Shown here in pieces: positions 3,942 to 58,682 of a stretch of DNA of 64,000 nucleotides. Under the pieces are notes generated by a model. It ran no database searches. It saw only the letters and a list, made by a program, of their open reading frames with translations, and had not been told where the DNA came from. Location of the stretch: positions 248,001 to 312,000 of the IMG/VR virus record IMGVR_UViG_3300029893_000001. One strand, given 5' to 3'. The translations under genes and the position numbers were made by a program. Every line of letters begins with the position of its first letter. The stretch's first letter is position 1.

Positions 3942-3969
3942 TAGATAAGGCTCCAGAGCAATGGTCTAA
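3942..3969 (-). promoter_or_regulatory. Phage promoter-like motif TTAG-N17-TTATCTA upstream of nrdJ
   Basis: Exact match to the motif repeated in other intergenic regions. Confidence 0.7.
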
Positions 3970-3984
3970 AGCTCCGCACCGTGT

Positions 3985-4443
3985 CTACTTTCTAAGCCAA
4001 AAGTCCAAAGAAACTAGGTAGGCATCGAGGTGTGAGTTTACCTTATCAAGAGCACGATCGATACCTTGTTCGTCACATACGCTCGTTAGAATTGGAACGA
4101 GGTCAGACTGAGCGGTGGACCACATTTTCGGGTCAGTCTTGAACGCGTGAGCTAGCTTCAAGTAGCCATCAGAAACAACGAGAAGAGCCGTTGCCTTGTC
4201 AGCATACGTCATGTTGGCACCTAACGATGATGTCAACAAGGCCTTCATCTTCATAGCCAAGGAACGAAGTGCTATGGCTCTCGATCGGGTGTAATCGAAA
4301 TGCTCAGTGGTGGAGAGTTTCTCGGCTAACGCATGCTGTATCTTGGATAAGATCGTCAACGATTTCGAACCACGAGGCCCCTCCTCCAAAAGAAGGATCT
4401 CTAATTCGTTCGCTACGTCTGCTGCGTGCTCCTCACGAGACAT
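3985..4443 (-). CDS. Hypothetical protein
   Basis: Operon-like overlap with the upstream gene. Confidence 0.7.
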   Translation of the reverse strand: MSREEHAADVANELEILLLEEGPRGSKSLTILSKIQHALAEKLSTTEHFDYTRSRAIALRSLAMKMKALLTSSLGANMTYADKATALLVVSDGYLKLAHAFKTDPKMWSTAQSDLVPILTSVCDEQGIDRALDKVNSHLDAYLVSLDFWLRK

Positions 4444-5254
4444 GACGGACCAAGCTTTCAGCGGGGATCAACATCCCCTCTAGAGAAGGGGAGAAGCATA
4501 TCCCCGCGTACGGGCATCCTCGCCACTTCCCATCCGAGGGCTTCTCACATACGGGGGGAGGAAGCACCCCATTTACCAAGTCTCGTTTCGCTTTTCGATA
4601 GAGCCGAAGAGTATCCTCGTAAGCGGTCTCCAGGGGACGACGCACAAAAACTCGAAAGTCATTAGGATTGTCGCGACTGAAGTAGACAAAGATCAATTTG
4701 TCGAGGTGCCAGTCGTTTTCTGCGTTTAACGCGTGAAGGTAACACGATGCTTGAAGCATGTGGTGCTCATACGGATCCTTCAAGGATCCCAAGTTCTTGC
4801 TACCAGTGGTTTTGAACTCGGCCACGCCGTTGTAGGAGACAGAGACGCCATCCACATGCATACCAAGTTCAGATTTTGGAGCCAGTTCTTCATACTTCTG
4901 TGGCAGCCCACAGACCGTACAATTTGCAGAGCCCTCTCGGTCATGTTCCGTCACCCCACAGCAGGTCCATGCGCCGTACAAGAAGTTTGAAATACCCAAG
5001 AAACGCTGAACCACCTCGTGAACAGCAGACCCTATACGAACATAAAAGTGGAAGTTGTAGTCTTCTCCACGGTACGCCCTATCGTCCTTAGGGATTCTAT
5101 GATGAATCACGTACTCCCGAGGACAAAACGGTAAACGAGACGAACGAAACTGAAAGCTATAGGGGAGAAGGATCTCTGACTCAAACGACTTCTTCAAGTC
5201 AGCAGCAATCCTGTCCTCTAATTCTTTCCTCGAAACACGCGATCCTTTAACCAT
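4433..5254 (-). CDS. Cas4-like PD-(D/E)XK exonuclease
   Basis: SSRLPFCPR, GSAVHE, HVDG...EFKT, Q.S.Y motif, C-terminal C..CPY..IC cluster. Confidence 0.8.
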   Translation of the reverse strand: MVKGSRVSRKELEDRIAADLKKSFESEILLPYSFQFRSSRLPFCPREYVIHHRIPKDDRAYRGEDYNFHFYVRIGSAVHEVVQRFLGISNFLYGAWTCCGVTEHDREGSANCTVCGLPQKYEELAPKSELGMHVDGVSVSYNGVAEFKTTGSKNLGSLKDPYEHHMLQASCYLHALNAENDWHLDKLIFVYFSRDNPNDFRVFVRRPLETAYEDTLRLYRKAKRDLVNGVLPPPVCEKPSDGKWRGCPYAGICFSPSLEGMLIPAESLVRHVS

Positions 5255-6201
5255 GCAAGTTGGCCCTCGTCGAGGGAGCCAGGATCATCGTCACCCTCGA
5301 TCCTGAGCACCTTGGTGAAGTCGAATTTTGCTTCGAGCGTGGGCTTGATTTCTCTTTCAGCCGAACGCCCGGCCGCGTCTGGGTCCATCAGAAGATAGGC
5401 TCGTTTGAAGTTCAACGATAGGAGCAAGTCTAGCTTTTCCTCACTCCAGTTGTTTGAGCCTAAGATACAAAGAGCCGGAATGCCTGCCTGGAGCAGATTG
5501 AGAGCGTCAACTTCGCCTTCCACCAGCACAATAGGCTCGTCCCCTTTGTGATACTTGCGTACGTAGTCGAACGGAAACAAGATTTTCTTTGCGTCACAAC
5601 CAGGCTTTCGGAAGTACTTCTGAAAGTCTTTCTTGTCTAGTCGGCGACCAACCCAGCCAACCAACCGGTCATACTGATAGTATGGCCAGAACGCCCGATC
5701 AACAACGAAGGAGTGACCGGTTCTACGACTTTTTAGCTCCTGTTTCCAGAGGTAAGTCGGGATTCTCCGCAAGAATTTCCTCGTCAATCCTCGCCACACA
5801 GGCTGGTCCCAAGGCGACAAAGCCAAGTCCGGAGGCAGCTTATCGTCCTCCTCGTCATCAAATACAAAAAACGAAGTGAGATCTTCAGCGAGCCTCTCGA
5901 AGACGTTAGTATCCGCAACACGATCGGTGTAGGTATCGGCATAAATCGTCGAGTTGAATTCAGCCAAGCCCATTGCCTTGGCGAGTTTGTTCCAACTGCC
6001 GGACCAGTCACAAACCCAGCAATGGGCCTTACGACCGTCTTTAGTCACCTCAAGGTGGAAGCCCTCGTCATACCCCTTTTCGTGAGGAAATGGGCAGTTC
6101 AATTTGAAGTTGTTCTGACCAGACGGTTTGAATTCCACGCCGGATCGAATGAACTCCGACGTTATATGACTCTCTGCTTCGATCGGGTGCGGCCAGGGCA
6201 T
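5218..6201 (-). CDS. DNA primase (Zn finger + TOPRIM)
   Basis: CPFPH...HCWVC zinc finger; LVEGEVDAL and MDPDAAG TOPRIM motifs. Start taken at ATG 6201. Confidence 0.88.
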   Translation of the reverse strand: MPWPHPIEAESHITSEFIRSGVEFKPSGQNNFKLNCPFPHEKGYDEGFHLEVTKDGRKAHCWVCDWSGSWNKLAKAMGLAEFNSTIYADTYTDRVADTNVFERLAEDLTSFFVFDDEEDDKLPPDLALSPWDQPVWRGLTRKFLRRIPTYLWKQELKSRRTGHSFVVDRAFWPYYQYDRLVGWVGRRLDKKDFQKYFRKPGCDAKKILFPFDYVRKYHKGDEPIVLVEGEVDALNLLQAGIPALCILGSNNWSEEKLDLLLSLNFKRAYLLMDPDAAGRSAEREIKPTLEAKFDFTKVLRIEGDDDPGSLDEGQLAWLKDRVFRGKN

Positions 6202-6205
6202 ACTC

Positions 6206-6514
6206 TCATCGTGCAGGAGGAGACAAAAGGTTCTCAACGCGAGAGAGAACGGAGTCCCATTCAGGCCCGGCCGTCTTACCTGCTCTCGCGAGAGCTACAA
6301 TGTCGGCCAAAACAGCCATGTGCTCATGAGGAGTAACAAGAAGTTGTACCAACGTCAGCTCATCCAACGGACCGGATGATGGCACGTACTCTTTCAGAAT
6401 CTCCATATCAAGGAGAAGGATGCCCCCCGACGTAGTGTAGTACTCAATTTTCGTGTGCTTCTCATCACCTTCCGTGCGGACAACGGAGACGAGAGGTACT
6501 CTAAGTTCTTGCAT
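6206..6514 (-). CDS. Hypothetical protein
   Basis: Fits the minus-strand gene run. Confidence 0.65.
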   Translation of the reverse strand: MQELRVPLVSVVRTEGDEKHTKIEYYTTSGGILLLDMEILKEYVPSSGPLDELTLVQLLVTPHEHMAVLADIVALARAGKTAGPEWDSVLSRVENLLSPPAR

Positions 6515-6530
6515 GGCCCCATTTTACAGG

Positions 6531-8220: not shown

Positions 8221-8399
8221 GCGGACCTCTTGTTAGGCTCATTGTTGTTTTGGGGTTCAGTCTGCTCAACTGACTCTAACGAGTCATGGGGGTGGAGGTC
8301 CCCCGTCGAGGCCCGACGCCTCTTAAGTCTTTCTTCCAAGTCAACAGTGTCGTTAGCTTGGACAACATCACCATATCGAACGGTAGCCATCTTGCACAC
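8217..8399 (-). CDS. Small hypothetical protein
   Basis: Fills the gap between neighbours with an ATGA overlap. Confidence 0.5.
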   Translation of the reverse strand: MCKMATVRYGDVVQANDTVDLEERLKRRRASTGDLHPHDSLESVEQTEPQNNNEPNKRSA

Positions 8400-9959: not shown

Positions 9960-10334
9960 TTACTTGGCAACCCAACCGGTATTGGTGTTATTGCCGGATT
10001 CCTTAACGTACAAGGTCGTTCCGGCTCCGCCGTCTCTCCTGACATATAGGTCGCCCACGCTGCCTACAACGGCACTTTCCGGGCTGCCAGTACCAGCAAG
10101 CACCTTCGCACCGCCTGTGACAACTTCGGCCTGATTGTCATCATTTGTGGCTGAAGGATTTACGGCAAACGCAAGGTGGCCAGCACTTGCTAAAGCCAAA
10201 AGGGCCGGACGTGTCAGCTCCAATTCATTGGCGGTGAGATCAAGCTGACGCACCTCATTTGGCTCAAGGATGCCGACATATGAACCTACAGGCAGACGAC
10301 TTGCGGTTCGATTCGTCACGGACACGGTGGGCAT
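9960..10334 (-). CDS. Short virion fibre/decoration protein
   Basis: C-terminal 'GTGSPESAVVGSVGDLYVRRDGGAGTTLYVKESG..NTGWVAK' motif typical of phage fibre/spike ends; N-domain shared with the two fibres; AAGGAG RBS. Confidence 0.7.
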   Translation of the reverse strand: MPTVSVTNRTASRLPVGSYVGILEPNEVRQLDLTANELELTRPALLALASAGHLAFAVNPSATNDDNQAEVVTGGAKVLAGTGSPESAVVGSVGDLYVRRDGGAGTTLYVKESGNNTNTGWVAK

Positions 10335-10374: not shown

Positions 10375-10402
10375 TAGATAACCAGTGCTCGCCGAAGACT
10401 AA
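10375..10402 (-). promoter_or_regulatory. Phage promoter-like motif TTAG-N17-TTATCTA
   Basis: Exact motif about 40 nt upstream of ATG 10334. Confidence 0.7.
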
Positions 10403-10424: not shown

Positions 10425-11561
10425 TTAGAGCAAACCGAGTCGACTGAATAGGGGGAGAACTTGATTCTGACCACCATTTACTGTTTGTACACGAGCCACG
10501 AGACTCTGCAGTCCAAAGTCATAAGGTCGCGTTGCAACGGCACCCACGCTCACCCTACGTAGCATATTGCGTTTAGTCTGTTGGAGCTGATTGTCTAAGT
10601 ACTCCTTGAGACGACTCATCGCGCTCTCATAAGCGCCGGTCCGGTCCACGTCCAACGTTACAGTTTGCCCACTAAAGTTGAATGCTAGTTCACCTTCACT
10701 CAGATACTGAGCGTTGAGCCCCCACCAAGCCGCCGCCATAAGGAGGAAATTGGTCATGCCAAAGGCATTTGGCCAGTTGACCAGCGTCCAATTCGTGATT
10801 GGGTTCACTGCATTTACGTAGTCAGCGCCACGAAGCAGGTATTCGTATAGGTCCGAATCGGAATACGCCTGAACATGTCCGATTTTCTTCTGCACCTTAT
10901 CGATTAGCATCCGAAGAGAAGGCTGAATCCACCAAAAAATCATGTCAGGAACACGAATCTGTTGAATCATTGTCACCGATGGTGATATTGCCGTCTGTCT
11001 CGTATTCCATACGACGAGATAGCAGCCAGTCGCTGTAAGCGGAGGTGTGTCCACGTAATACGTGTAGAACCCATCAGACTGAACGGTCTGTACGGCAGGC
11101 GTCAGATTCGTCTGAACGTTGGCAGAATCAATTAGCTGAACCTGGACTATCTCTTGTGCGTTCTTGAACTTGATCAGAGCGCGTTCGGAGTTCCCCACGT
11201 AGGTTAGGTTCGTATATGTACGCTCATCCGGAGACGCCTCGATGTTATCAATGATGATGAAGTTCGATTGCCTCTCGATTTGCCGCCCGCCGTTCGTTAC
11301 GACAAGCCAATCAATTCGCCAAGGATTGTCTGGACCCATCATGTCGGCGTCCGCAGGAACAAACCAGGTGAATCGCCAGCGCCCCGAACCAGCGTTGAGT
11401 GCGACGCCGGACTGAATTATCTCCTCCGCAGGAGAGACAATGGACACCGAAGGATAAGCAACAGGGTCAAGCGGAACGATAGGTGTTCCATCCTCTTCAA
11501 CGAAGAGCTGTTCAAAAACAACAGGCGTTCCACGAACAACCTTTTGAGGTGAAATTGCCAT
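10425..11561 (-). CDS. Virion structural protein (Ig-like N-terminus, probable neck/head-tail adaptor C-terminus)
   Basis: Beta-sandwich-like N-half; C-half 'LRMLIDK...YSDSDLYEYL...FSGQTVTLD' resembles head-tail adaptor proteins. Confidence 0.55.
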   Translation of the reverse strand: MAISPQKVVRGTPVVFEQLFVEEDGTPIVPLDPVAYPSVSIVSPAEEIIQSGVALNAGSGRWRFTWFVPADADMMGPDNPWRIDWLVVTNGGRQIERQSNFIIIDNIEASPDERTYTNLTYVGNSERALIKFKNAQEIVQVQLIDSANVQTNLTPAVQTVQSDGFYTYYVDTPPLTATGCYLVVWNTRQTAISPSVTMIQQIRVPDMIFWWIQPSLRMLIDKVQKKIGHVQAYSDSDLYEYLLRGADYVNAVNPITNWTLVNWPNAFGMTNFLLMAAAWWGLNAQYLSEGELAFNFSGQTVTLDVDRTGAYESAMSRLKEYLDNQLQQTKRNMLRRVSVGAVATRPYDFGLQSLVARVQTVNGGQNQVLPLFSRLGLL

Positions 11562-11588
11562 AGTGATGACAACCCGAAGACTTATCTT
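11560..11588 (+). promoter_or_regulatory. Phage promoter-like motif ATAG-N18-TTATCTT
   Basis: Motif variant oriented into the 11653 gene. Confidence 0.55.
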
Positions 11589-11604
11589 TTAGAAGGCCTG
11601 GAAG

Positions 11605-11633
11605 CAAATAACTAGGTGCAAATATCAGGCTAT
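11605..11633 (-). promoter_or_regulatory. Phage promoter-like motif ATAG-N18-TTATTTG
   Basis: Motif variant oriented into the 11561 gene; same boxes and spacing as 19736-19764. Confidence 0.55.
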
Positions 11634-19360: not shown

Positions 19361-19387
19361 GAATGGATGACCTATTATTTTCGGGTT

Positions 19388-19726: not shown

Positions 19727-19735
19727 CACTGCAGC

Positions 19736-19764
19736 CAAATAAAAGAAAAACTCTGGAAGACTAT
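19736..19764 (-). promoter_or_regulatory. Phage promoter-like motif ATAG-N18-TTATTTG
   Basis: Motif variant directly upstream of ATG 19726. Confidence 0.55.
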
Positions 19765-19833
19765 GTCAGTCTAGCACTGACGCGATCCGCTCTCCAATTC
19801 GTATCGCATCAGCTAAGTGGCGTCGGGTTCAAC

Positions 19834-20286: not shown

Positions 20287-20322
20287 TGATAGTAACTCCG
20301 TGGGGCTAGGGATTACGTCATT

Positions 20323-20350
20323 TAGATAACGTTTTTCTTCAGCTCACTAA
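20323..20350 (-). promoter_or_regulatory. Phage promoter-like motif TTAG-N17-TTATCTA
   Basis: Exact motif about 37 nt upstream of ATG 20286. Confidence 0.7.
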
Positions 20351-24009: not shown

Positions 24010-24037
24010 TTAGAGAAGGGGCAAACCCACTTATCTA
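24010..24037 (+). promoter_or_regulatory. Phage promoter-like motif TTAG-N17-TTATCTA heading the head operon
   Basis: Exact motif about 54 nt upstream of ATG 24091. Confidence 0.7.
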
Positions 24038-43351: not shown

Positions 43352-43614
43352 AGAGAGCCCCATCATATAAGAACCCTCCTTCCGCCATCAACCCAGGAGC
43401 ACTGGAGGTATGGCGATACGTAGTGAAGCACTTCGCAGACGATATCTACGAGTCGAAGTCAATGAGAGACCAATGGAAAAAGGCGAAGTCTCACTTTGAA
43501 CGCCTGTGCAGAAAGAAGGACATCCTTCCGTATGCATTTCTTTCTGAAGGCAGAAAAGCCGCTCACTTTATTGCGCTGGCCTCTCGTGTCGAGCGCCTCT
43601 CAAGGAGCTTCTGA
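43348..43614 (+). CDS. Small hypothetical protein
   Basis: GGAGG RBS, ATGA overlap. Confidence 0.7.
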   Translation: MKRAPSYKNPPSAINPGALEVWRYVVKHFADDIYESKSMRDQWKKAKSHFERLCRKKDILPYAFLSEGRKAAHFIALASRVERLSRSF

Positions 43615-48868: not shown

Positions 48869-51800
48869 ATGGCCCTAAATACTGCCAAAAGAATCATGCG
48901 TAAGGCTTCTCCTGAGGATGAGTCTTCTCTGTCATTAGAGGGGCCGAACGCACTTGGGGTTGACGAACCCCAGCAGGAGCTTGAGAAGGTCGTAATTCCG
49001 GATGGTGGAGAAGTACATCTTCAGAACACCAATATTCTTCCGGACTCCGTCGCTGTGACGGACCTGAGGACCGACAAGGAGTTTGTCGCGTCCGAAAATC
49101 AAACCCTAGAACAAGGTCAGTACTTTCTCCTCCCAGAGGACGGAACGCTGTTCTTCCATCCATCTGATGCTGGAGCACGTGTTCAGATTAACTACTTGTG
49201 GAAGGAAGGCATTGAGAGCGACGATGACGAGGATGAAGATGACCTCGACGATGATGCGGACGAAGACGATGGGGATAACGAGACTTCTGGCAAGAAGCCC
49301 AGAGTAACAACCACTCCGGCAGATAGTTTGTGGCATTTGGACGAGGGGTGGTTTAAGTGGACACCTGAGTCCAAGAAGGTCACCGTAAACGATTCTCTGC
49401 AGGCAAAACTCGGAACAGATGTAGATTTCAGAAAAGGAATCACTGTCAGGAATGAACAGACCGGCAAAGAACTGCACGTTGTGTTGCAGGGAGCCCCTAC
49501 TCAAGTCACGCGAACTATCTCGGGCAAGAAACTAGAGATTAATCTTCGGAGGCCTGTCGACTCGACGTCTGTGTACGTGGAAAGCGCGGAAACAGGAGAT
49601 AGGTTTACCCCAGTAGAAAGCCCTGCCAATCTTCAACCCAATACATACTACGTCGAAAGCGACGTAGGGGTACTGCGATTTCACGAGGCAAATGGAGGAA
49701 CGAAGGTTCGGATTGAGTTCCGTCGACCTGTAGGTCCTGGAGAGGTCTCGTACAACTATGTGAACGGCGTTCTAACCTGGGGCGATCCCTCAGCTTCTGG
49801 GACCACTTACGTGGTGGAATACCATGTTAAGGGGCAGAAGGGCAAGCCACTCACCCTAGAAGGAGAAGAGGGTGAGGAGAAGGAGTACCAGCTTGTAGAG
49901 TCGTTCAAGTCTCGTGCAGAGAATTTGTGGATGCACCTTCTGGACAACCCAGACCCTGCATTTGTTCGGGATACCCTGCTTCCCATCATCGAGGATGAGA
50001 TTGAAAGTACCCGAGATAAAATTCTCGGCAGCAAAAAGAGCGAACCCCAAAAAGAGGAAGAACTTAGGAGCGTACCCGACCTTACGCGAGAGTTCATGGA
50101 GTTCGAGCAGCTCCTTGCCAAGCGGGAAGAGAACGACGACCAGGACACACGTGAACTTGCACGCGATTACGTTCAAACAGAAATAGCCCCTAAACTTGCG
50201 CGTTTCTACAGCCTTGCGAGCCTGCTCGCAGAGCGCATTTATGACATGCAGTCCGAGTCCGCAAAGGATGAGGACTTCCCAGAGTTTGGGGGCGCCGGTT
50301 CAAGATCTTTGGACTTGAACACCCTAAAGTATTTGAAGCGTGTCCGCCAAGAAGCAAACCGGCTCGATGAAGACCTAGTTGATTTCTCAAAGTACTACAC
50401 AGGTCTCCTCATTTCTTGGATCCTTGATGCTGATACATACTACCCTTCAAAGAAGGCGAGGGAGAAGAAAAAGGGAAGGGCTTCAAAGAAGGCGAGGGAG
50501 AAGAAAAAGGGAAGGGCTTCAAAGAAGGCGAGGGAGAAGAAAAAGGGAAGGGATCCGAGGTGGGAAGGGATCAAAACGGTTTTTGAGCGAGCAGGGATTG
50601 GATTAGCTGATCTGCAAGTTGTGGCACTGGAGGCTTTTCGGCGGGCGATTCTCGAATTCGATCGCGAGAGACGTAATAAGGAAACCACCCCAGATCCGAA
50701 GAAGTTCAGAATCTACGGAAACCCGGTCATCAAGCGCCGAGTAACGAACGCCTTGAAGAAGGTGTTCGACAAATACCAACAGGAACAGACAGTCGAAACG
50801 ACTAGGTCAGGGTCCACTACAGTCACAATTCCAGAGGACGGAGGCGAAGTAGACCTGAAGGTCCCCGGCATTCGCTTAGAAGACCTTGAAGTTACAGGGC
50901 CTGACGGCAAAGTCTTCACTTCAGCAAGCGGTAAGCTGTTTGCCACCGAGGCGGAGAAGAGGAAGAGCCCTCGTGTCAAGATCCTACTCGGCAAGGAGAT
51001 GGACAAAGACGCCCAAGTCTCTGTCACCGACCCAAAGACCGGCAAAAAGCTTGCAATCATTCGTAGTAAGGACCATCCCTGGAACAAGGAGCTGAAGAAG
51101 AAGGTTGCAGAGGATCCAGATGTCTTCTACTTCGCACACTCCAGTGGAACTCTTTGGCTGAGTGAGGCGTACAGGGGTAAGTCTCTCCTAGTCGAGGCCC
51201 CTGGTATTGGAGGAGATTCCACGGGAATTGGAAAGGACCAGTATCGCGCCCATCCAACCAAAGGCACCATCGAGTTCTCGCCACTCAATGGCGGCGAAGA
51301 AGTCAAGGTATCCTACTCTCAGACAATCAGGGCTAAGAGACAAGTGAGCCCAGTCGTCAGGACTGATGAAGAGGGGGAATCGCTGTCTTTGGTTGAAATG
51401 CAGGAAGATGAAGGTGCGGATCCCCTGACAAAGGCTGAAGAAGCAATCTCTCAGGAAAACGTAGAAAAGCTACTTGATCTCATCGGTGAGATTCTCCTCG
51501 TAGAAGAAGACCCCAGGTTAACCGACGAAGATCGTGCCATTCTCCAGGGTCTTCTTGGAGTCGGGGAGCCGGGGGGACAACGCCTTACGATTCAAGAGAT
51601 TGCAGCCAGAGAGCCATTCAACGTTGACCCATCTGATTCGAACAAGATGAATCAGATCAAGACGAAGAGGCAAAAAGCAGCAGATACTCTCCTGGAAATC
51701 CTTCGAGAAAAAGCAGAGGAAGACCGTTCTCTTCGTAAGATGATTCGTCCCTTTGAAGCCATCCTCGTAGGGAAGGATGGTGCAAAGGGAATTGAACACG

Positions 51801-54800
51801 ACAAGTTCTTGGGGTACCTGAAGCAAGCCCCTGAGGATAAGACTCGTTCGTTCCAACAGGTTTTGGTGGGCTTGCTTGGAAAGTCAGGACTCAAGCAAGA
51901 CGAGGAGAACATCCTCCGTTGGATGTGGGCGCTTCCGGGTCGACTTCGTCGCGATCAGGACGCCGAAGATAAGCAGTATGAAGTCCTTCCAGATGGTCTA
52001 CGCCCTGCGGACTCGCCAGGGGCGCGTCTGCAAGAGATTGCAATCGATGAGTTCAACATCGAGGCCGACGATCAGGGAAACATTTCTCAGGCCGCAACTG
52101 GTGTCGTCAACAAGGTCTACGAGAGAGCCCTAGACAAGTTCGCAGGAAAATTCAATACGGTCTATGAGGCGAGGAAAGACTTCTTCAAAGAGAAGTTCCC
52201 GGAATTCGTTCAGTACTACGACAAGCAACTTGGAAAACAAACGCTTCGCGATGAACTGTCTACGATCGAGCGGGATGAGTACCAAGCACCCCCTGCGGCA
52301 GTAAAGCGACCGGAAGAGAAGCGCACACCGCTTTTTGACCAGATTAAGACGAGCCTCTCCGGGGTGGATGAAGCGATGCTTCGTTCTCTGATGGAGGAGC
52401 TTGTTAAGACGCACAAGAAGGGCGGAGACATCCATGCACTGATTCAGCAGCGAGAAAAGGATATCGACACCTTGACGCAAAAAGGTGCGAAGCTCCTCGA
52501 CTCTCGCACCAAGGATCTGCGTGCGGAGGTTGAAGAGCTGAAAAAGGCCTGGAGCCAGAGCCGGGCTGAACACGAACGCCTTAGTGAAGAACTCAGTGAT
52601 GCGCTTCGGACACGAGAGAAACTGCGGGAGACTGTTGTTGCCGACAATGAGGAGTTAGCGAAAAAGAAGACTCACTTTCAGGTACTTCGAAAGATCATCG
52701 GGCTCCTCAAGTCGTGGGAGACAAGCACTCTATTCCAGCTTCTGTCGCCCAAGAACATCGAGGCAACAGAAGACCCAGTGGAGCAGGACGCCCTCAAAGA
52801 GTACTCCTATCTACGAAACGCCAGCAACGAGGATCTAGAAGAGGCCAGGGAAGACCTAGCAAATGAACTGACGGAGCGAAGTGAAGAGCTGAAGGAACTT
52901 CGAAGGCAGGCTGTCGAACTTGCTGACGAAGAAGTTCGTACCCAGCTCCGTCAGTTGAAAGAGAAGATCGAAGACCTTCGCTCCAGAAAAGAAAAGTTCT
53001 TGGAGTTGACTGCCAAACAGCAAGCAGCACTGGACTCGAAGAAGGATGAGTTAGAGAAGAAACTACGTCCGCTTCAGAACAAGCTTGAGGAGCACCTCAG
53101 GAGTCATAATTCTGCGCAAGAACTACAGGTACTCCAAAAGGTCTACAAATTCCTCTCAGATCGCGAAGAGCTGAGGCGTAGTGATGGTCGTTTCAATCTC
53201 GACAACATGTTCGAGGTTCCAAAGCTAGAGAAGGGTAAGGGCTATCAGCCGCCTAAGCTCCAGCCTGGCGAAGAGGATACGTACCAGCCCCTGCCAAGGA
53301 AGCTTCCCCAGCCTGCCATCTCAACACCAAAGAAGACGGCGCCTGTTGAAGAAGACGCAGGCACCCCTGCCTCAAAACCTGCTTCGAAAACGCTGAAAAC
53401 GATTGCAGAGCAATACACGAAGGACGAAATCTCTGCTGAGATCTTCATTCGCAGATGCAAAAAGTACTTCAAGGGACGCCTACCCGAAGAAGCAGAATCT
53501 GCCATCCAGAGGTATGACGAGGGGCTGATTTCGCTTGACGAGGCGGCTAATATCGTTGCTACTGAGGCCCTTGACGCCATAGAGGACGTGGAACCGGCGT
53601 CGACCGACGAGGCGAAGAAAAAGCCCACGGAAGAAGATAGCGACAGGTTCACATCACCTGCAAAGAAAGCACCGACGGAGGTTCAAAGAACCTTGTTCGA
53701 AGAACTGCGTTCGGTTGCACTTCCTATTGACCCTGAGGAGTCCAAAAAGGACTATCAGAAGAGGCTGGACAACTTTAAGGGTCTCATGCTGGCTCTTCGG
53801 AAGCACTTCGCTGAAGGTCAGTCGATCAAAACTTTCAAGCCCAAGTTCTCAGCCGCTAAGACGCTCCCTGACCAGAACAGAGTCCTTCGCGCAGTCGTAG
53901 AGTACCTTCGAGATTTTGCTTCAGATTTGAAGCAGGCTCCTGGAGTTTGGGATCTTTCTGGGCTATTCAAGCCCACAATCACAAAGCCTGTTGAATCGTT
54001 GCAGCCAAAGGTTGACCTGTCCGATGACGATTCAGCAGTTGAAAGTCTCCTGAACTCTCAGCCGTCGCTAAGCAACAAGACGCAAGCGAAGGCGCTCCAC
54101 TCGATGATTCAGATCATCAACAACGGAGATCCGGTCACAAAGATCATCAAGAGCCTGAGGAAGACGGGCAACCCCAAGGTTCAGGGTGCGCTAAATCTCG
54201 CCTTGCGCCTGTCTTACTTCATGACGTTACACGAAGACCTGCAGAAAGAAGACGGCACTTGGGATTTCAAACCGCTGTACACAGGTCAATACAAGTTCCC
54301 TTCATTCGAAGAGTATGATAGGTCTCGCCCACTAGAGGAACACTTGAGCCCGCTGATTGACGGAATTCAGCGACAGCTTCAAGAGGAGGCAGGACCTGAC
54401 GGCGGCATTGAGTCCCGCACCGGAACACAACAGCGTGTTCTTGATTTGCTCCACCAAATGTCCGAGTTGGCGCTCCACGGCATGGACCTGGACCAAATGC
54501 AGGAGCACTTCGAAAAGGAAGACAAGAGAGAAGCGAAGCCCTACAGCCTTGCTTACCTCTTCCAAGTGACGCGCCATTTCCTAGAAAAGTTGAACAGGAC
54601 CAAGGGCCTAGCCAACATGCAGAACGACATGGGCTTGGCAGACGTATTTGGTCCGGGCGCTCCTCCGAGCACCCCAACCGAACAAGATGAAGTCGACCCC
54701 GTCCCAGAACAAGAACAGAAGGAGCTTCTTCCGCAGGATGACCGGACCACTGCTTTCCGACAGATGGTTCATGTCATGGATATGGACGAAGCGGAAGCAC

Positions 54801-57310
54801 GCGTTGCCCAGCAACTCGTGTCCGCACTTCAGCTTCGCATGGAGAGCGGCACTAAGGTCGCATCTGAACTTCTGGAGGCCTTGTTACGGAAGAACCCAAA
54901 GTTCTTACCCATCGTCAAAAAGGTGCTGACTTTTATCGGGCGCAATCGAGAAAAATTCGAGTCAGGCGTGCCCGGCGTTCCAGACCTGAGCATCCTGACT
55001 GGAATGCCGTTCAAGCATCCTGCTGTGGAGAAGACTCCAGAAAAGGCAGTGAAGCCAGAGGTCCAACAGCTCCTTCAAGAGAAGTCGACACCCGCCCCGG
55101 AGTCCCAGCGCAAAAAGCTACGTAAGTCTATTTTCGACGAATTTGTGGCAGAATACGAGCTAGACGATCAACAGAAGAATCTGTTTGCGGATGCGATCCG
55201 TGCGTTGAAAGCTCACGAGGGCAAGGCCGGCATCGAAAAGCTGGTTGGGAAGACTGAGGGCACCCAGTTAGAGGGCGTGTTTGAGCTTCTTGTCGACTTC
55301 TTCAAGGAAAAGGGATTGGTTGGCTCCGACGGAGTTCCAGATTTCCGTGGAATCTCTGTTCCGCCCCTCAGTGGTAGAGAGTCTTTCTTTGCAGAGGATG
55401 GAACCCCGAATCTGGGTCGAGTTGAGGAACAGGCGCCGGAATTCGACGCCGACGAGATTTCTGACGAAATGCCAGAGCCAAAGGCCGACCTGGAAGAACA
55501 CACAGAAGACCTTGTTGATGAACTAGGCGGAGAGGGCGCTCGTTTCGCGCCAGACCTACAGGAGGCCGTCGACTTCCTGAAGTCCGACCAAGTTGTCACT
55601 GAAGAGGACAGCACTCCTCGCAGCAAATCCAAAGACCGGCTCAAGAGGAACATCTGGAACCTGATGGTCCAGGAGTTCGATTTCGATGAAGAGGAGCAGC
55701 AGAACGCTGCTGAAATTCTCGAAGCGGTTCAGAAGAATGGATTGGACAAGGTGAAGGCCCAACTTTCTGGGCAGGGCCACCTCGAAGTCCTTCTAGATGA
55801 CCTGATTGACTACATCAAGGAACAGGGGCTGCAAGAGAGCGACATCCCTGACATCGAGTTGCCTGCTGCGCCTGACGCTGAGGATACAGATGACGTTGGA
55901 ATGACGATAGAGGAGCTGATGGGTGAAAAGCCTGTCGAAAAAGCTCCCGCTCGACTCGCTCCGACAATCCGACGCGAAGTGGATGAAGAGACACTTCAGA
56001 AAGTGCTTGAAGAGGCACAAAAAGTACAGGGGAAGGACGAACGTCTATTCGACTCGTCTGAAGTTGTTCGCGGCCTAGAAGGAAAGATTGCACCAGAAGA
56101 CGCGAAGAACGCTCTACTGCAAGCAGCGGAACAAGGCCTCGTCGATCTACGGGCGGAAAGCGGAGCTGTTTCACTTTCTCCAGAAGACGCGAAATTTGTT
56201 CCTGTGTCGCCTGATGGCGTACCATTCTCGTCAGGGCGAGTTCTCCGCATGCCCGAGCCTGCGGCGGCCCCCCAGCCCGCAGAACCAGCCCCGGCTCCAG
56301 GAAAGGCACCTTCTACACGAGGGAGGCTTCCTGCTGCCCTCGTGGACCGGGAGACAAGTTCCGCCGTCTACACCTTCGTCGTGAAACATTCTGGTCTTAC
56401 CCCAGATGAAATAAACGCACTAAATGAGGCCATGCCGGGCCTCGAAAACATGACCTACCGACAGGTGGCAGAGGCGTTTCGAAAGAACCACGAGCAGCTT
56501 GGCGACGCCGCTAAGAATGCTGCGCTGAAGTACATCAAAAACCTCACTGCTTACCTTCGTCTTGTTCAACAGGGGAAGGATCCTGTGGGTGGACCTCCCG
56601 CCTCCTCTGCTAAGCGTCCAAAGGGGCAGTGGAGGGACGACCCCGCAACCGAGAAGCAAATTGCGAAACTACAGGAGTTGGCGCACGAGCTTCAATCAAT
56701 GGGACACAGCCTTCCGCCTGTCAGTCTAAGCCCCACAACAAAGGGAGAGGCCTCGGACGGTCTCAACGCTCTGCGGGCGGCCCTAGATGAGGCTAAGAAG
56801 TCGATAGAGACAAAGCAGGCGCCACCCGCTCAAACGAAAGAACAGGTTCGGGCTGACCGTCTACACGAACTTCTGTCCAAAGACCGTACGCATGCGAGAC
56901 GCGTACAGCGACTTCGTGCTCTTATCGATCTAGGTTCCTTCACAGCGGAGGAAATCAGCCAGGCCGTCTCTCGACTAGAAGTGGCTGATAAGGAGAAGGC
57001 AGACCTTTTGGGTCTCCTTCCTGGAGCAGCGCCTGCGCGCGCAGAGCAGCCTAAGGCACCGCAGAAATCTACCGCACCATCGGGTGCAACGCCTGATCGG
57101 AATGAGCGAAAGAGGCTTCAATTGCTCCTCGAAAAGGCGTTGGAATGGTCGACCGCACACGAGGTCACCTCCGCACACGCCTTCAGGCTCTTCCTAAAAA
57201 AGAAGCGACCTGAACTGCTTCCGATGTACGATAGAATCATGCCTGATGTCCAGAAAGCCCTGGACGCGATCTATGGTAACGAGCTAGACTTCGATCTAAG
57301 TGGCATTTGA
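48869..57310 (+). CDS. Giant 2813-aa protein containing sigma-70-like regions 2 and 4, nested beta-domains, coiled coil and helical repeats
   Basis: Uninterrupted ORF; 'ADLQVVALEAFRRAILEFDRER...KFRIYGNPVIKRRV' (sigma 2) and 'LTDEDRAILQGLLGV...LTIQEIA...QIKTKRQKA' (sigma 4). Confidence 0.8.
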   Translation: MALNTAKRIMRKASPEDESSLSLEGPNALGVDEPQQELEKVVIPDGGEVHLQNTNILPDSVAVTDLRTDKEFVASENQTLEQGQYFLLPEDGTLFFHPSDAGARVQINYLWKEGIESDDDEDEDDLDDDADEDDGDNETSGKKPRVTTTPADSLWHLDEGWFKWTPESKKVTVNDSLQAKLGTDVDFRKGITVRNEQTGKELHVVLQGAPTQVTRTISGKKLEINLRRPVDSTSVYVESAETGDRFTPVESPANLQPNTYYVESDVGVLRFHEANGGTKVRIEFRRPVGPGEVSYNYVNGVLTWGDPSASGTTYVVEYHVKGQKGKPLTLEGEEGEEKEYQLVESFKSRAENLWMHLLDNPDPAFVRDTLLPIIEDEIESTRDKILGSKKSEPQKEEELRSVPDLTREFMEFEQLLAKREENDDQDTRELARDYVQTEIAPKLARFYSLASLLAERIYDMQSESAKDEDFPEFGGAGSRSLDLNTLKYLKRVRQEANRLDEDLVDFSKYYTGLLISWILDADTYYPSKKAREKKKGRASKKAREKKKGRASKKAREKKKGRDPRWEGIKTVFERAGIGLADLQVVALEAFRRAILEFDRERRNKETTPDPKKFRIYGNPVIKRRVTNALKKVFDKYQQEQTVETTRSGSTTVTIPEDGGEVDLKVPGIRLEDLEVTGPDGKVFTSASGKLFATEAEKRKSPRVKILLGKEMDKDAQVSVTDPKTGKKLAIIRSKDHPWNKELKKKVAEDPDVFYFAHSSGTLWLSEAYRGKSLLVEAPGIGGDSTGIGKDQYRAHPTKGTIEFSPLNGGEEVKVSYSQTIRAKRQVSPVVRTDEEGESLSLVEMQEDEGADPLTKAEEAISQENVEKLLDLIGEILLVEEDPRLTDEDRAILQGLLGVGEPGGQRLTIQEIAAREPFNVDPSDSNKMNQIKTKRQKAADTLLEILREKAEEDRSLRKMIRPFEAILVGKDGAKGIEHDKFLGYLKQAPEDKTRSFQQVLVGLLGKSGLKQDEENILRWMWALPGRLRRDQDAEDKQYEVLPDGLRPADSPGARLQEIAIDEFNIEADDQGNISQAATGVVNKVYERALDKFAGKFNTVYEARKDFFKEKFPEFVQYYDKQLGKQTLRDELSTIERDEYQAPPAAVKRPEEKRTPLFDQIKTSLSGVDEAMLRSLMEELVKTHKKGGDIHALIQQREKDIDTLTQKGAKLLDSRTKDLRAEVEELKKAWSQSRAEHERLSEELSDALRTREKLRETVVADNEELAKKKTHFQVLRKIIGLLKSWETSTLFQLLSPKNIEATEDPVEQDALKEYSYLRNASNEDLEEAREDLANELTERSEELKELRRQAVELADEEVRTQLRQLKEKIEDLRSRKEKFLELTAKQQAALDSKKDELEKKLRPLQNKLEEHLRSHNSAQELQVLQKVYKFLSDREELRRSDGRFNLDNMFEVPKLEKGKGYQPPKLQPGEEDTYQPLPRKLPQPAISTPKKTAPVEEDAGTPASKPASKTLKTIAEQYTKDEISAEIFIRRCKKYFKGRLPEEAESAIQRYDEGLISLDEAANIVATEALDAIEDVEPASTDEAKKKPTEEDSDRFTSPAKKAPTEVQRTLFEELRSVALPIDPEESKKDYQKRLDNFKGLMLALRKHFAEGQSIKTFKPKFSAAKTLPDQNRVLRAVVEYLRDFASDLKQAPGVWDLSGLFKPTITKPVESLQPKVDLSDDDSAVESLLNSQPSLSNKTQAKALHSMIQIINNGDPVTKIIKSLRKTGNPKVQGALNLALRLSYFMTLHEDLQKEDGTWDFKPLYTGQYKFPSFEEYDRSRPLEEHLSPLIDGIQRQLQEEAGPDGGIESRTGTQQRVLDLLHQMSELALHGMDLDQMQEHFEKEDKREAKPYSLAYLFQVTRHFLEKLNRTKGLANMQNDMGLADVFGPGAPPSTPTEQDEVDPVPEQEQKELLPQDDRTTAFRQMVHVMDMDEAEARVAQQLVSALQLRMESGTKVASELLEALLRKNPKFLPIVKKVLTFIGRNREKFESGVPGVPDLSILTGMPFKHPAVEKTPEKAVKPEVQQLLQEKSTPAPESQRKKLRKSIFDEFVAEYELDDQQKNLFADAIRALKAHEGKAGIEKLVGKTEGTQLEGVFELLVDFFKEKGLVGSDGVPDFRGISVPPLSGRESFFAEDGTPNLGRVEEQAPEFDADEISDEMPEPKADLEEHTEDLVDELGGEGARFAPDLQEAVDFLKSDQVVTEEDSTPRSKSKDRLKRNIWNLMVQEFDFDEEEQQNAAEILEAVQKNGLDKVKAQLSGQGHLEVLLDDLIDYIKEQGLQESDIPDIELPAAPDAEDTDDVGMTIEELMGEKPVEKAPARLAPTIRREVDEETLQKVLEEAQKVQGKDERLFDSSEVVRGLEGKIAPEDAKNALLQAAEQGLVDLRAESGAVSLSPEDAKFVPVSPDGVPFSSGRVLRMPEPAAAPQPAEPAPAPGKAPSTRGRLPAALVDRETSSAVYTFVVKHSGLTPDEINALNEAMPGLENMTYRQVAEAFRKNHEQLGDAAKNAALKYIKNLTAYLRLVQQGKDPVGGPPASSAKRPKGQWRDDPATEKQIAKLQELAHELQSMGHSLPPVSLSPTTKGEASDGLNALRAALDEAKKSIETKQAPPAQTKEQVRADRLHELLSKDRTHARRVQRLRALIDLGSFTAEEISQAVSRLEVADKEKADLLGLLPGAAPARAEQPKAPQKSTAPSGATPDRNERKRLQLLLEKALEWSTAHEVTSAHAFRLFLKKKRPELLPMYDRIMPDVQKALDAIYGNELDFDLSGI
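50445..50552 (+). repeat. Perfect 36-bp x3 tandem repeat encoding (SKKAREKKKGRA)n
   Basis: CTTCAAAGAAGGCGAGGGAGAAGAAAAAGGGAAGGG at 50445, 50481 and 50517. Confidence 0.95.
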
Positions 57311-57860: not shown

Positions 57861-58105
57861 ACGCGAACAGTGCTGGTCCATTCGTCTAGGAACCGGCTGA
57901 ACTTCAACACGCCGATGGCTTCGAGGTAATCCTCTGCCTCGGCTGAGACCTTCTCAGCCTGGTCTAACTGACCACTTTCGACAGCCAAGCAATATCTGTC
58001 AAGCAGGCTTTCGAATTGGTCTTCTAGGTGTGTCAACGCACTTTTCATTATCATCTCCTGGGGGTTAAATGCGAAAGGCCTCCAAGGAGGCCTTTCGTTA
58101 ATCAT
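57857..58105 (-). CDS. Small hypothetical protein
   Basis: Minus-strand run; the true start may be downstream (MIMKS). Confidence 0.55.
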   Translation of the reverse strand: MINERPPWRPFAFNPQEMIMKSALTHLEDQFESLLDRYCLAVESGQLDQAEKVSAEAEDYLEAIGVLKFSRFLDEWTSTVRV

Positions 58106-58295
58106 TGGTTGTTTCTGGGGAGGTGGCGGCTGGGTTATTAGCCTGACGCTTGGCTTCTGCTCTTAGCTCCCGAATGACGAGTGAGACCATAACGACAAAA
58201 CCTGGCCTCACTGAGATCGGAATGTCCCAGTCCTTCAGTTTCTTGTTAACTCGTTGGGCGATCGCTTCCGCTGTGTCGAGACTGATCTTCATCAC
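58098..58295 (-). CDS. Small hypothetical protein
   Basis: GTGA overlap. Confidence 0.55.
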   Translation of the reverse strand: MMKISLDTAEAIAQRVNKKLKDWDIPISVRPGFVVMVSLVIRELRAEAKRQANNPAATSPETTND

Positions 58296-58531
58296 GCCTT
58301 CTCGAAGGTCTTCAGCGCTCGAAGTACTGTAACTGCCCTAAGCTCCTCAGGAGGAGTCGGACGGGCGCGTCCCTGTACCCACTTCTTTACGGTGCCCACA
58401 GATGTTCCCAGAAGTCGAGCAACGGATAACACCTGATCGCTGTCTACGACTTCGCCAGTACTGTCAGAGTAGCCCAGCTTCTCCTTTAGAAGGCTGCGGA
58501 ACTCGTCCTTGGGTAATGCACTCCCAAACAT
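58292..58531 (-). CDS. XRE/Cro-like HTH protein
   Basis: 'VARLLGTSVGTVKKWVQGRARP'. Confidence 0.75.
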   Translation of the reverse strand: MFGSALPKDEFRSLLKEKLGYSDSTGEVVDSDQVLSVARLLGTSVGTVKKWVQGRARPTPPEELRAVTVLRALKTFEKA

Positions 58532-58545
58532 GTTCTTCCTTTCGA

Positions 58546-58632
58546 CGGAGGGTGAGGGATTCGAACCCCCGGAGCCCGTGAAGGCTCAGCGGTTTTCAAG
58601 ACCGCCACCATAAACCACTCGGTCAACCCTCC
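58546..58632 (-). tRNA. tRNA-Ser(UGA)
   Basis: GGAGGGT acceptor, GCGGT-CTTGAAA-ACCGC anticodon arm, long variable arm, GTTCGAATC T-loop; no encoded CCA. Confidence 0.93.
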
Positions 58633-58653
58633 ATAGAGGGTCTGGGTTACCAG

Positions 58654-58682
58654 AAGATAACCAGGCCCTCGTTCTTTGCTAG
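58654..58682 (-). promoter_or_regulatory. Phage promoter-like motif CTAG-N18-TTATCTT upstream of tRNA-Ser
   Basis: Motif variant about 22 nt before the tRNA 5' end. Confidence 0.55.

What the first reader, a model, noticed from the sequence alone, without database searches (positions are those of the whole stretch)
3942..58682. Novel bipartite phage promoter motif TAG-N17/18-TTATYT, found 8 times
Seen: exact TTAG-N17-TTATCTA at 3942-3969(-), 10375-10402(-), 20323-20350(-) and 24010-24037(+). N18 variants occur at 11560-11588(+, ATAG/TTATCTT), 11605-11633(-, ATAG/TTATTTG), 19736-19764(-, ATAG/TTATTTG) and 58654-58682(-, CTAG/TTATCTT). All lie in or at the edge of intergenic gaps and point into the adjacent gene 10-105 nt away, and the spacers are unconserved. 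This is the -35/-10 geometry of a sigma factor but matches neither sigma70 nor sigma28 (TAAA-N15-GCCGATAA) consensus. Inference: recognised by a phage-encoded sigma, for which the giant protein and the 23152 regulator are in-window candidates.
Basis: partly seen in the sequence, partly recalled or inferred. Interest (0 to 1): 0.72.

Follow-up and report, generated by a model that had tools for sequence, protein, structure and literature searches.

The report
Conserved jumbo-phage promoter with own sigma
The two-box motif TAG-N17/18-TTATYT is a real, conserved promoter-like signal at the heads of replication and virion operons of an uncultivated 392-kb phage, most likely read by the phage's own sigma factor, whose gene begins at the left edge of the window.

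Summary
All eight sites are at the stated coordinates. The window is part of a 392,328-bp jumbo-phage record from subsurface metagenomes. The whole genome holds only nine matches: eight in the window and one 10 kb to its left. About 2.4 are expected. All nine are intergenic and point at the next gene or tRNA.

Relatives keep both boxes and the spacing at orthologous operon heads, while the spacers diverge. Among 130 intergenic TTATYT words in five genomes, TAG peaks only at spacers 17 and 18 (15 and 14 cases, against about 1.9 at other spacers). Coding copies show no peak. Several genes start 6-7 nt after the hexamer, which places the transcription start where a -10 box predicts.

The motif heads operons for ribonucleotide reductase, primase, the sigma gene itself, terminase-portal-capsid, a tail lysin and tRNA-Ser.

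A divergent RpoD-family sigma is encoded at window 1-345(-), running off the left edge. Assigning the motif to it is inference; no RNA data exist. A second, 47-copy contiguous motif (GAACCCTGnCGATAnTA) governs the genome arms. This is a new member of a known kind.

The parts
3943..3968 (-). Site 1: tTAG-N17-TTATCTa. It heads the operon for ribonucleotide reductase (1866-3881), three small ORFs and then the sigma gene.
   Evidence: RNR by PHROG/Pfam. Orthologous sites in G001 (1504-1529) and G004 (315243-315268) have different spacers. Start codon 61 nt downstream.
10376..10401 (-). Site 2: tTAG-N17-TTATCTa. It heads the operon from 9960-10334 down to 3985, which includes a primase and a Cas4-like exonuclease.
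   Evidence: Orthologues in G001 (8353-8378) and G003 (61423-61448). In G001 the same ATG-CCC start lies 7 nt after the hexamer.
11561..11587 (+). Site 3: aTAG-N18-TTATCTt. Rightward promoter of a face-to-face pair, for gene 11653-12783.
   Evidence: The pair is conserved in G001 (9540/9586) and G005 (63213/63258). G003 and G004 keep this arm with TTATAT as the -10 box.
11606..11632 (-). Site 4: aTAG-N18-TTATTTg. Leftward promoter of the pair, for gene 10425-11561 (matches a head-tail connector family).
   Evidence: Orthologues in G001, G003 (59562-59588), G004 (323480-323506) and G005.
19737..19763 (-). Site 5: aTAG-N18-TTATTTg. The gene begins 7-10 nt after the hexamer, so the mRNA is probably leaderless.
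   Evidence: The N-terminus is conserved from that codon: MADDAPVYDFICLCC (G000), MVEDAPTYDFICLCC (G001), and a GTG start in G005 after TAG-N18-TTATGT-N7.
20324..20349 (-). Site 6: tTAG-N17-TTATCTa, for gene 19834-20286. It lies divergent from hsp20.
   Evidence: Orthologues in G001, G003, G004 and G005. The boxes are the conserved blocks in the three-genome alignment.
24011..24036 (+). Site 7: tTAG-N17-TTATCTa. It heads the 34-kb virion operon (24091 to 57860) holding terminase, portal, major head protein and the giant ORF.
   Evidence: In the six-genome alignment the contiguous invariant columns are TTA(G)A and TTAT-T; mean column identity is 65%.
58655..58681 (-). Site 8: cTAG-N18-TTATCTt. 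The hexamer ends 21 nt before tRNA-Ser (58544-58633). Its TAG is also the stop codon of gene 58679-59395.
1..345 (-). 5' part of the phage RpoD-family sigma gene (genome 246993-248345, 450 aa). It lies in the same-strand gene string downstream of site 1. This is the proposed reader of the motif.
   Evidence: Sigma70_r2 35 bits, above the cut-off. ORF. NCBIfam RpoD/SigA/RpoS models cover residues about 230-447. PDB SigA/SigB/RpoS alignments cover residues 207-449. Orthologues at 48-68% identity in G003-G006.
43421..43447 (+). Weak extra candidate: TAG-N18-ATATCT, PWM score 12.5. It may lie inside ORF 43348-43614. Uncertain.

Best explanation
The motif is a phage-specific promoter class with sigma70-family geometry. 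It has a -35-like box (A/T)TAG(T)(C) and a -10-like box (G/C)TTATYT(a), 17 or 18 bp apart.

It sits at the heads of the transcription units of the conserved core of a jumbo phage:
- nucleotide and DNA metabolism genes;
- the sigma gene itself;
- the terminase-portal-capsid-tail operon;
- a tail lysin operon;
- a tRNA gene.

The phage has no detectable RNA polymerase of its own. The proposed mechanism is that host core RNA polymerase carries the phage's divergent RpoD-family sigma. Region 4 of that sigma would read the TAG box and region 2 the TTATYT box. Transcription would start about 7 nt after the hexamer, and at some genes that position is the start codon itself (leaderless mRNA).

Shown: the motif is real, strand- and position-specific, and conserved. 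A full-length sigma (regions 2-4) is encoded next to and downstream of these sites.

Inferred: that the sites are promoters, where transcription starts, and that this sigma, rather than a host sigma, reads them.
For: 1. Placement. 9 of 9 genomic matches are intergenic and co-directional with the next gene. A PWM scan at score 12 or more finds 16 intergenic against 3 coding sites (binomial 4e-10).

2. Geometry. Among 130 intergenic TTATYT words in G000, G001, G003, G004 and G005, TAG occurs 15 times at spacer 17 and 14 times at spacer 18. The mean at the 33 other spacers is about 1.85 (Poisson about 1e-9). The 344 coding copies show no peak. In reverse, TTATCT is the commonest hexamer 17/18 nt after an intergenic TAG.

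3. Footprinting. Orthologous operon heads in genomes with 57-85% protein identity keep both boxes and the spacing over diverged spacers.

4. Start-site geometry. Start codons opening conserved proteins lie 6-7 nt after the hexamer in G001 (two sites), G005, G003 and G004, and 7-10 nt after it in G000 site 5.

5. Reader. There is one sigma70-family gene, with region 2 above the Pfam cut-off and alignment to SigA/SigB/RpoS through region 4.2. No Rpb2_6 match was found. Of the large proteins, those with a PHROG match are a helicase, a topoisomerase, an SbcC-like protein and a lysin. The sigma gene and the motif co-occur in G000, G003, G004 and G005.

6. Altered recognition residues. In the alignment, W433/W434/Q437 are kept, but the positions equivalent to Y425, Y430, T440, R441 and R584 are A, H, L, Y and A. 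The residue numbering is from my own knowledge of E. coli sigma70. These changes fit non-canonical boxes.

7. Host-type promoters exist alongside. A conserved TTGAC(G/A)-N16-19-TAnnnT lies before hsp20, and a few TTGACA-type intergenic sites occur elsewhere. The host consensus therefore looks canonical and differs from this motif.
Against: - No transcript data exist. The three metatranscriptome runs from the same study hold nothing from this phage.
- The sigma gene sits in a gene string reachable only from these same promoters (sites 4, 2 and 1). No class-B site lies upstream. Sigma-dependence therefore needs an unexplained kick-start.
- Sigma region 2.4/3.0 is nearly invariant even in G006, where the strict motif is not enriched (4 hits against 3 control). 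G006 orthologous sites keep TTATCT/TTATAT but mostly lose TAG.
- The second motif also has a -10-like part (GATAnT), so it too could be the sigma's target.
- About 100 further intergenic TTATYT words lack the TAG box.
- The capsid gene's own upstream gap has no such site.
- My gene calls are crude, and the PWM was trained on regex-chosen sites.
Confidence: 0.55

Rival explanations
1. The sites are promoters, but a host sigma reads them: either the primary sigma of an unknown host with an unusual consensus, or a host alternative sigma. The phage sigma would then serve another class, for example the 47-copy GAACCCTGnCGATAnTA motif or unrecognised late promoters such as the capsid gene's.
For: - The sigma gene lies downstream of these sites with no other recognisable promoter, so host recognition would remove the kick-start problem.
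- Sigma region 2.4 is conserved in G006, where the TAG box is mostly lost.
- The host is unknown; the source is subsurface and rock metagenomes.
Against: - The boxes match no sigma70 or sigma28 consensus, and no sigma70-type hit coincides with a site.
- Canonical TTGAC-type promoters are present and conserved in the same genomes.
- The regulon includes virion genes, which phages rarely leave to unmodified host holoenzyme (established knowledge).
- The second motif has no -35 element. A sigma with regions 2-4 fits a 17-bp-spaced bipartite site better.
Confidence: 0.25
2. The sites are promoters for an unrecognised phage-encoded RNA polymerase or a non-sigma initiation factor, not for a sigma70-family holoenzyme.
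For: - Many large phage proteins have no annotation.
- The T7-type RNA_pol family search is uninformative, because its control rang in no genome.
Against: - No Rpb2_6 match.
- The giant ORF is a charged protein with a tandem KAREKKKGR repeat and has no Pfam, PHROG or PDB hit.
- Two short boxes with a free 17/18-bp spacer are the signature of sigma70-family recognition, not of single-subunit polymerases, which use contiguous promoters (established knowledge).
Confidence: 0.07
3. The motif is not a promoter. It would be a two-part binding site for a phage regulator (operator), or another DNA signal placed between genes.
For: Intergenic placement and conservation alone would also fit an operator. 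About 100 intergenic TTATYT words lack TAG.
Against: - The two boxes are unlike each other and are not palindromic.
- Every site is oriented with the downstream gene, including both arms of a divergent pair.
- Start codons lie 6-7 nt after the hexamer.
- One site lies 21 nt before a tRNA gene.
Confidence: 0.08
4. The sites are a chance collection picked out after the fact.
For: A mononucleotide shuffle of the genome gives 9.0 matches, the same as observed. The pattern was defined after seeing the sites.
Against: - All nine are intergenic (1.5e-7).
- The spacer-specific peak occurs only among intergenic copies.
- The pattern replicates in G001 (7 of 7 against 0.1 expected) and G004 (6 hits against 0 for the reversed-pattern control).
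- Conservation at orthologous positions.
Confidence: 0.01

Closest known systems
Bacillus phage SPO1 late promoters, read by phage sigma gp34 with gp33: CGTTAGA-N17-19-GATATT (consensus as quoted in PMC3601020)
   Same: A phage-encoded sigma redirects host core polymerase to a bipartite, non-host consensus with a spacer of 17-19 bp. The -35 box contains TTAGA, as in sites 1 and 7 here.
   Different: The -10 box differs (GATATT against TTATYT). The sigma here aligns with RpoD/SigA/RpoS-type proteins across regions 2-4; homology to gp34 was not tested. The host and phage lineage are unrelated. The TTAGA resemblance may be coincidence.
Canonical bacterial sigma70 promoters (TTGACA-N17-TATAAT)
   Same: Two boxes, a 16-18-bp non-conserved spacer, and a start about 7 nt after the -10 box. 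If the hexamer is read as TATCTn, the spacing and the leaderless start codons fit exactly.
   Different: The position equivalent to T-7 is not conserved. The -35 box is TAG-centred. None of the sites passes the sigma70-type scan.
RpoD-like sigma factors of jumbo phages without their own RNA polymerase ('group 2' in PMC7824862), and the rpoD-like gene 118 of Pseudomonas phage PaBG (PMC7412058)
   Same: The strategy is the same: no phage polymerase and a near-complete RpoD-like sigma. PaBG is among the closest cultured relatives by terminase (about 32% identity). It also carries a Cas4-like nuclease.
   Different: Neither cited paper's retrieved passages give a cognate promoter for those sigmas. 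PaBG has no copy of this motif at all.
T4-type late promoters (TATAAATA, read by gp55 with gp33) and T4 middle promoters (MotA box plus -10); from my own knowledge
   Same: Phage-specific promoter classes layered on host core polymerase.
   Different: T4 late promoters have a single -10-type box and no -35 box. Here both boxes are needed to define the class.

Membership tests
sigma70-family-dependent bipartite promoter (generic) | Two conserved boxes separated by a spacer of fixed length and free sequence | tested here: met
   TAG peaks only at spacers 17 and 18 upstream of intergenic TTATYT. Spacers diverge between orthologues.
sigma70-family-dependent bipartite promoter (generic) | Upstream of, and co-directional with, transcription units | tested here: met
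   9 of 9 in G000. Sites lie at operon heads, at a divergent pair and before a tRNA gene.
sigma70-family-dependent bipartite promoter (generic) | Transcription starts about 6-8 nt after the -10 box | not testable with these tools
   No RNA reads exist. The only support is indirect: conserved start codons 6-7 nt after the hexamer.
sigma70-family-dependent bipartite promoter (generic) | Initiation depends on a specific sigma | not testable with these tools
   Only co-occurrence of the sigma gene and the motif in G000, G003, G004 and G005.
Canonical sigma70 (TTGACA/TATAAT) promoter | At least 9 of 12 matches to the consensus, with A at position 2 and T at position 6 of the -10 hexamer | tested here: not met
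   No scan hit coincides with any site. Hits are not above shuffles: 10 against 14.9, and 11 against 10.6.
sigma28/FliA promoter (TAAA-N15-GCCGATAA) | TAAA and GCCGATAA boxes 15 bp apart | tested here: not met
   The boxes are TAG and TTATYT at 17/18 bp. GCCGATA occurs in this genome only as part of the separate contiguous 18-bp motif.
SPO1 late promoter (CGTTAGA-N17-19-GATATT) | Both consensus boxes | tested here: not met
   TTAGA is present in some -35 boxes, but the -10 box is TTATYT, not GATATT (consensus from PMC3601020).
RpoD/sigma70 protein family (the proposed reader) | Region 2 domain above the curated threshold | tested here: met
   PF04542: 35.3 bits in the genome search and 31.6 bits for the protein, against a cut-off of 24.
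RpoD/sigma70 protein family (the proposed reader) | Regions 3 and 4 present, as needed for -35 recognition | tested here: met
   Alignments run to the region 4.2 helix of B. subtilis SigA (query 207-449 against chain residues 104-351 of 371). NCBIfam RpoD_Cterm covers positions 6-216 of 238. Pfam r3 and r4 models are not hit on their own.
RpoD/sigma70 protein family (the proposed reader) | Membership of a named equivalog (RpoD, RpoS, SigB, FliA and others) | tested here: not met
   The best score is 61.5 bits against cut-offs of 190-1020. It is a divergent member of the superfamily, not of any named subfamily.

The most novel reading that the evidence does not exclude
An RpoD-family sigma with a remodelled melting pocket recognises a -10 element that lacks the near-universal T at -7. 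In the pocket, the positions equivalent to sigma70 Y425 and Y430 are Ala and His. The sigma also drives its own gene from the same promoters.

This positive-feedback switch would run the whole replication and virion core of a jumbo-phage clade. A separate 18-bp contiguous promoter class, whose upstream 8-mer changes from phage to phage, would run the accessory arms. Together they would form a two-code transcription programme on host core polymerase, partly through leaderless mRNAs and face-to-face overlapping promoters.
Probability: 0.25. Interest if true: 0.62.

Novelty: new member of a known kind. Interest (0 to 1): 0.45.

Why it matters
Many huge phages found only in metagenomes carry RpoD-like sigma genes (PMC7162821, PMC7824862). 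The two jumbo-phage papers I checked for this (PMC7824862, PMC7412058) give no promoter for them.

This window offers a concrete, conserved sigma-promoter pair to test: a consensus, about 16-20 sites, orthologues in at least five genomes, and a defined regulon. That would make the temporal programme of an uncultivated jumbo-phage clade readable from sequence. It would also provide an orthogonal sigma/promoter pair for synthetic biology.

It remains an ordinary kind of system. Phage sigma cascades have been known since SPO1.

Tried and rejected
- RNA evidence. No RNA run holds the capsid gene beyond 4-7% of its words. Three metatranscriptome runs from the source study laid nothing on window 19300-24900, while the DNA run covered it in one contig.
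- Near-identical phage records: none in the GenBank phage collection.
Pfam, PHROG, NCBIfam, PDB and Atlas give nothing for the giant ORF or ORF 23152. One Atlas call on the giant ORF failed on length.
- A second sigma. Sigma70_r4 and r4_2 give only sub-threshold HTH hits, at window 25157-25246, window 58373-58423 and genome about 386.5 kb. The 208-aa ORF at 25127-25753 may be a small terminase, but that is a guess.
- Phage RNA polymerase. Rpb2_6 is absent. The T7-type search is uninformative because its control rang nowhere.
- More distant relatives. G006, G007 and G008 (sigma 40-48% identical) show no enrichment of the strict motif. PaBG has none.
- A possible third motif from the capsid gene's upstream gap (AGTCTTACCC) does not recur at other promoters.
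- Linking the 18-bp motif to the sigma gene: no copy lies upstream of it.
- No complex prediction was run, because jobs with DNA receive no verdict.


Full report
**What the window is.** The window is bases 248001-312000 of a 392,328-bp virus record rated complete. Its GC content is 53%. Nearly all genes are on the minus strand, except a plus-strand block at about 259-305 kb. DNA runs that hold it come from subsurface and rock metagenomes.

By terminase, among the closest cultured relatives is Pseudomonas jumbo phage PaBG, at about 32% identity. I called genes with my own codon-usage ORF picker, which covers 83% of the genome. All 'intergenic' statements rest on those crude calls.

**The observation.** All eight sites are exactly as described, and they are the only matches in the window. 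In the whole genome there are nine: the eight plus 237961-237987(-), 10 kb left of the window.

- TTATYT is a rare word here, with 125 copies on both strands. The product of word frequencies predicts about 2.4 matches per genome, so about 0.4 per window.
- A plain mononucleotide shuffle gives 9.0, so the count alone proves nothing.
- Placement does. All nine -10-like hexamers are intergenic where 17% of the genome is (1.5e-7).
- Each site points at a co-directional start codon or tRNA 7-65 nt away.

- I took every TTATYT word in G000 and four relatives and counted TAG at each spacer from 5 to 39. The 130 intergenic words give 15 at spacer 17 and 14 at spacer 18, against a mean of 1.85 elsewhere (Poisson about 1e-9). 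The 344 coding words are flat.
- In reverse, the commonest hexamer 17-18 nt after an intergenic TAG is TTATCT (21 cases), followed by the overlapping TATCTA (14).
- A weight matrix with pseudocounts finds 16 intergenic against 3 coding sites at score 12 or more. The extra candidates have TAA in place of TAG, or a 19-bp spacer: 172648(-), 159104(-), 95209(-) and 332301(-). The matrix was trained on regex-chosen sites. The intergenic/coding contrast is not circular, but the list of extra sites is provisional.

**Relatives.** Terminase and sigma queries brought in the following viral contigs. I fetched all of them whole.

| Genome | Size | Similarity to G000 |
|---|---|---|
| G001 | 24.6 kb | 85% terminase identity |
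| G002 | 51 kb | 71% terminase identity |
| G003 | 164 kb | 71% terminase identity |
| G004 | 424 kb, terminal repeats | sigma 68% |
| G005 | 95 kb | sigma 66% |
| G006 | 388 kb | sigma 48% |

They are collinear with G000 over the core region.

- In G001, all 7 TTATYT words of the contig carry TAG at N17/18, against 0.1 expected.
- G004 has 6 hits against 0 for the reversed-pattern control, and G005 has 8 against 2.
- Sites 1, 2, 3/4, 5, 6 and 7 each have orthologues at the same gene junctions, with the same spacing and different spacers.
- In the six-genome alignment around site 7, the contiguous invariant columns are TTA(G)A and TTAT-T, in a background of 65% identity.
- The -10 box tolerates TTATAT (G003 and G004, arm 3) and TTATGT (G005, site 5).
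- In G006 the hexamer persists at orthologous junctions but TAG is mostly lost, except at the site-7 orthologue.
- G007, G008 and PaBG show no enrichment.

**What the sites control**.

- Site 7 heads a 34-kb plus-strand operon with terminase, portal, a virion protein, the major head protein and the 2813-aa ORF.
- Sites 4, 2 and 1 head successive minus-strand units. These hold a gene matching a head-tail connector family, primase, a Cas4-like exonuclease, ribonucleotide reductase, the sigma gene and an ORF immediately downstream that looks like a T4 gp32-type single-strand-binding protein by eye (no family hit).
- Site 8 lies 21 nt before tRNA-Ser.
- The out-of-window site heads an operon beginning with a 1480-aa protein that carries an endolysin/metallopeptidase-type domain.

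So the regulon is the conserved replication-plus-virion core, not only late genes.

**Where transcription would start.** At site 5 the protein N-terminus is conserved from a start codon lying 10 nt (G000), 7 nt (G001) and 7 nt (G005) after the hexamer. There is no room for a ribosome-binding site.

In G001, site 2 has the same ATG-CCC start 7 nt after the hexamer, whereas G000 has a 41-nt leader with AAGGAG. G003 and G004 add further cases at 6-7 nt.

If these are leaderless mRNAs, the start lies about 7-8 nt after TTATYT. That is the position expected if TATYTn is the -12 to -7 hexamer. This supports the -10 assignment from sequence alone. It is indirect.

**Who reads it.** The genome has one sigma70-family gene, at 246993-248345(-). 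Its first 345 nt are window 1-345(-).

- It aligns to SigA, SigB and RpoS from region 1.2/2 through the region 4.2 helix. It is far below every named subfamily's cut-off.
- No Rpb2_6 match exists. The T7-type polymerase search is uninformative. No second clear sigma was found.
- A sigma with regions 2-4 fits a 17-bp-spaced two-box site.
- In the alignment, W433, W434 and Q437 (E. coli numbering, from my own knowledge) are kept. The positions of Y425, Y430, T440, R441 and R584 are A, H, L, Y and A. These are changes at residues that contact -11, -12 and the -35 box, and they fit a non-canonical consensus.
- The same genomes carry canonical-looking host-type promoters. A conserved TTGAC(G/A)-N16-19-TAnnnT lies before hsp20 in G000, G001 and G005. 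A few TTGACA-type intergenic sites occur on the gene strand (7 of 16 hits intergenic, p = 0.013).

**Weak points.**

- The sigma gene can only be reached from these same promoters. That implies autoregulation with an unexplained first round.
- Sigma region 2.4/3.0 is almost unchanged in G006, while the region 4.2 helix varies. This fits the retained -10 box and the drifting -35 box there, but does not prove the link.
- No RNA data exist.

**A second system.** An unbiased k-mer comparison of intergenic DNA against the whole genome found a much more abundant motif, tGAACCCTGnCGATAnTAg. Its features:

- 47 copies, all on the gene strand, commonly about 15-45 nt before the start codon where one is visible, with no -35 element.
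- They fill the genome arms (0-185 kb and 340-392 kb) and are nearly absent from the core.
- The window has two copies: 21844-21860(-) before an NAD synthetase gene, and 61062-61078(-) 21 nt before tRNA-Gln.
- G004 uses cAAAGTCCGnCGATAcTAa and G006 uses CAACCCTGGCCATACTA. So a canonical-looking -10 part (A at -11, T at -7) stays constant, while the adjacent 8-mer changes between phages.
- What reads it is open. It is the main reason the sigma assignment stays at about 0.55.

**Verdict.** The promoter reading is well supported.

This is a new member of a known kind, phage-specific sigma-dependent promoters, with SPO1 late promoters CGTTAGA-N17-19-GATATT as the nearest described analogue (PMC3601020). 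RpoD-like sigmas in jumbo phages are known (PMC7824862, PMC7412058). The passages I retrieved from those papers give no cognate promoter.

Noticed in passing
window 21844-21860(-) and 61062-61078(-); genome-wide 47 copies: A second, contiguous 18-bp promoter-like motif, tGAACCCTGnCGATAnTAg. All copies are on the gene strand. They are confined to the genome arms (0-185 and 340-392 kb). The 8-mer differs in relatives: AAAGTCCG in G004 and CAACCCTGG in G006. Its reader is unknown.
   Followed up: partly
window 11561-11632: Sites 3 and 4 are face-to-face. Each -35 box lies in the other's leader, and the two -10 boxes are 18 bp apart, so two polymerases could not occupy both at once. The arrangement is conserved in G001 and G005, and with TTATAT as one arm's -10 box in G003 and G004.
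   Followed up: partly
window 19721-19763(-); G001 13269-13295 and 8353-8378; G005 about 68790-68815: Start codons of conserved proteins lie 7-10 nt after the hexamer with no Shine-Dalgarno sequence, so the mRNAs are probably leaderless. In G001 the 41-nt leader seen at G000 site 2 is absent.
   Followed up: partly
window 20361-20389(+): hsp20 (20411-20794) is preceded by TTGACG-N17-TAGTGT. The TTGAC box is conserved in G001 and G005. It looks like a host-type promoter, sharing the intergenic gap with site 6.
   Followed up: partly
window 34965-35546: The major head gene is bracketed by strong terminator hairpins: one upstream at 34992-35026, and one downstream of the gene at 36711-36745. It has a gap of about 500 nt upstream with no TAG-N17/18-TTATYT site. 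A block AGTCTTACCC...GGACyCAA..GAAGCnAGT is conserved with G003, and G003 and G004 read TAGTCTTAC there. A short ORF begins after the terminator.
   Followed up: partly
window 48869-57310(+): The giant 2813-aa ORF is rich in Lys, Glu and Asp and contains a tandem KAREKKKGR repeat. It has no family or PDB match and is only 24-29% identical in relatives. It lies near the end of the virion operon (the second-last gene). Function unknown; there is no sign of sigma or polymerase motifs.
   Followed up: partly
window 58544-58633, 60896-60966, 60970-61040 (all -): Three tRNA genes: Ser-tga, Gln-ctg and Gln-ttg. The Ser gene follows a TAG/TTATCT site and the Gln pair follows a GAACCCTG-type site, each about 21 nt upstream.
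   Followed up: yes
window 21811-21837(-): A 12-bp hairpin with a T-run lies between the GAACCCTG-type motif and the NAD synthetase start. Several other copies of that motif are also followed by hairpins. These could be 5' stabilisers or attenuators.
   Followed up: no
window 58679-58681 and genome 237985-237987: In two sites the TAG box is also the stop codon of the upstream gene. In site 3 the TAG abuts the divergent gene's ATG.
   Followed up: yes
G003 53.90-54.12 kb (locus L011 about 13900-14120): Tandem repeats of about 26 bp containing GGGGACACTGGCATACTATCATCAGT. They lie in an intergenic stretch of the relative and resemble its version of the contiguous motif.
   Followed up: no
window 4433-5254(-): A Cas4/RecB-like exonuclease gene (PHROG 'CRISPR/Cas system associated'), as also reported for phage PaBG. 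No CRISPR array was looked for.
   Followed up: no
genome-wide in G000 and G004: About 100 further intergenic TTATYT words lack the TAG box. Some lie directly after tRNA genes, for example G000 132174 and G004 192070 and 207436. They may be -10-only promoters or processing signals.
   Followed up: no
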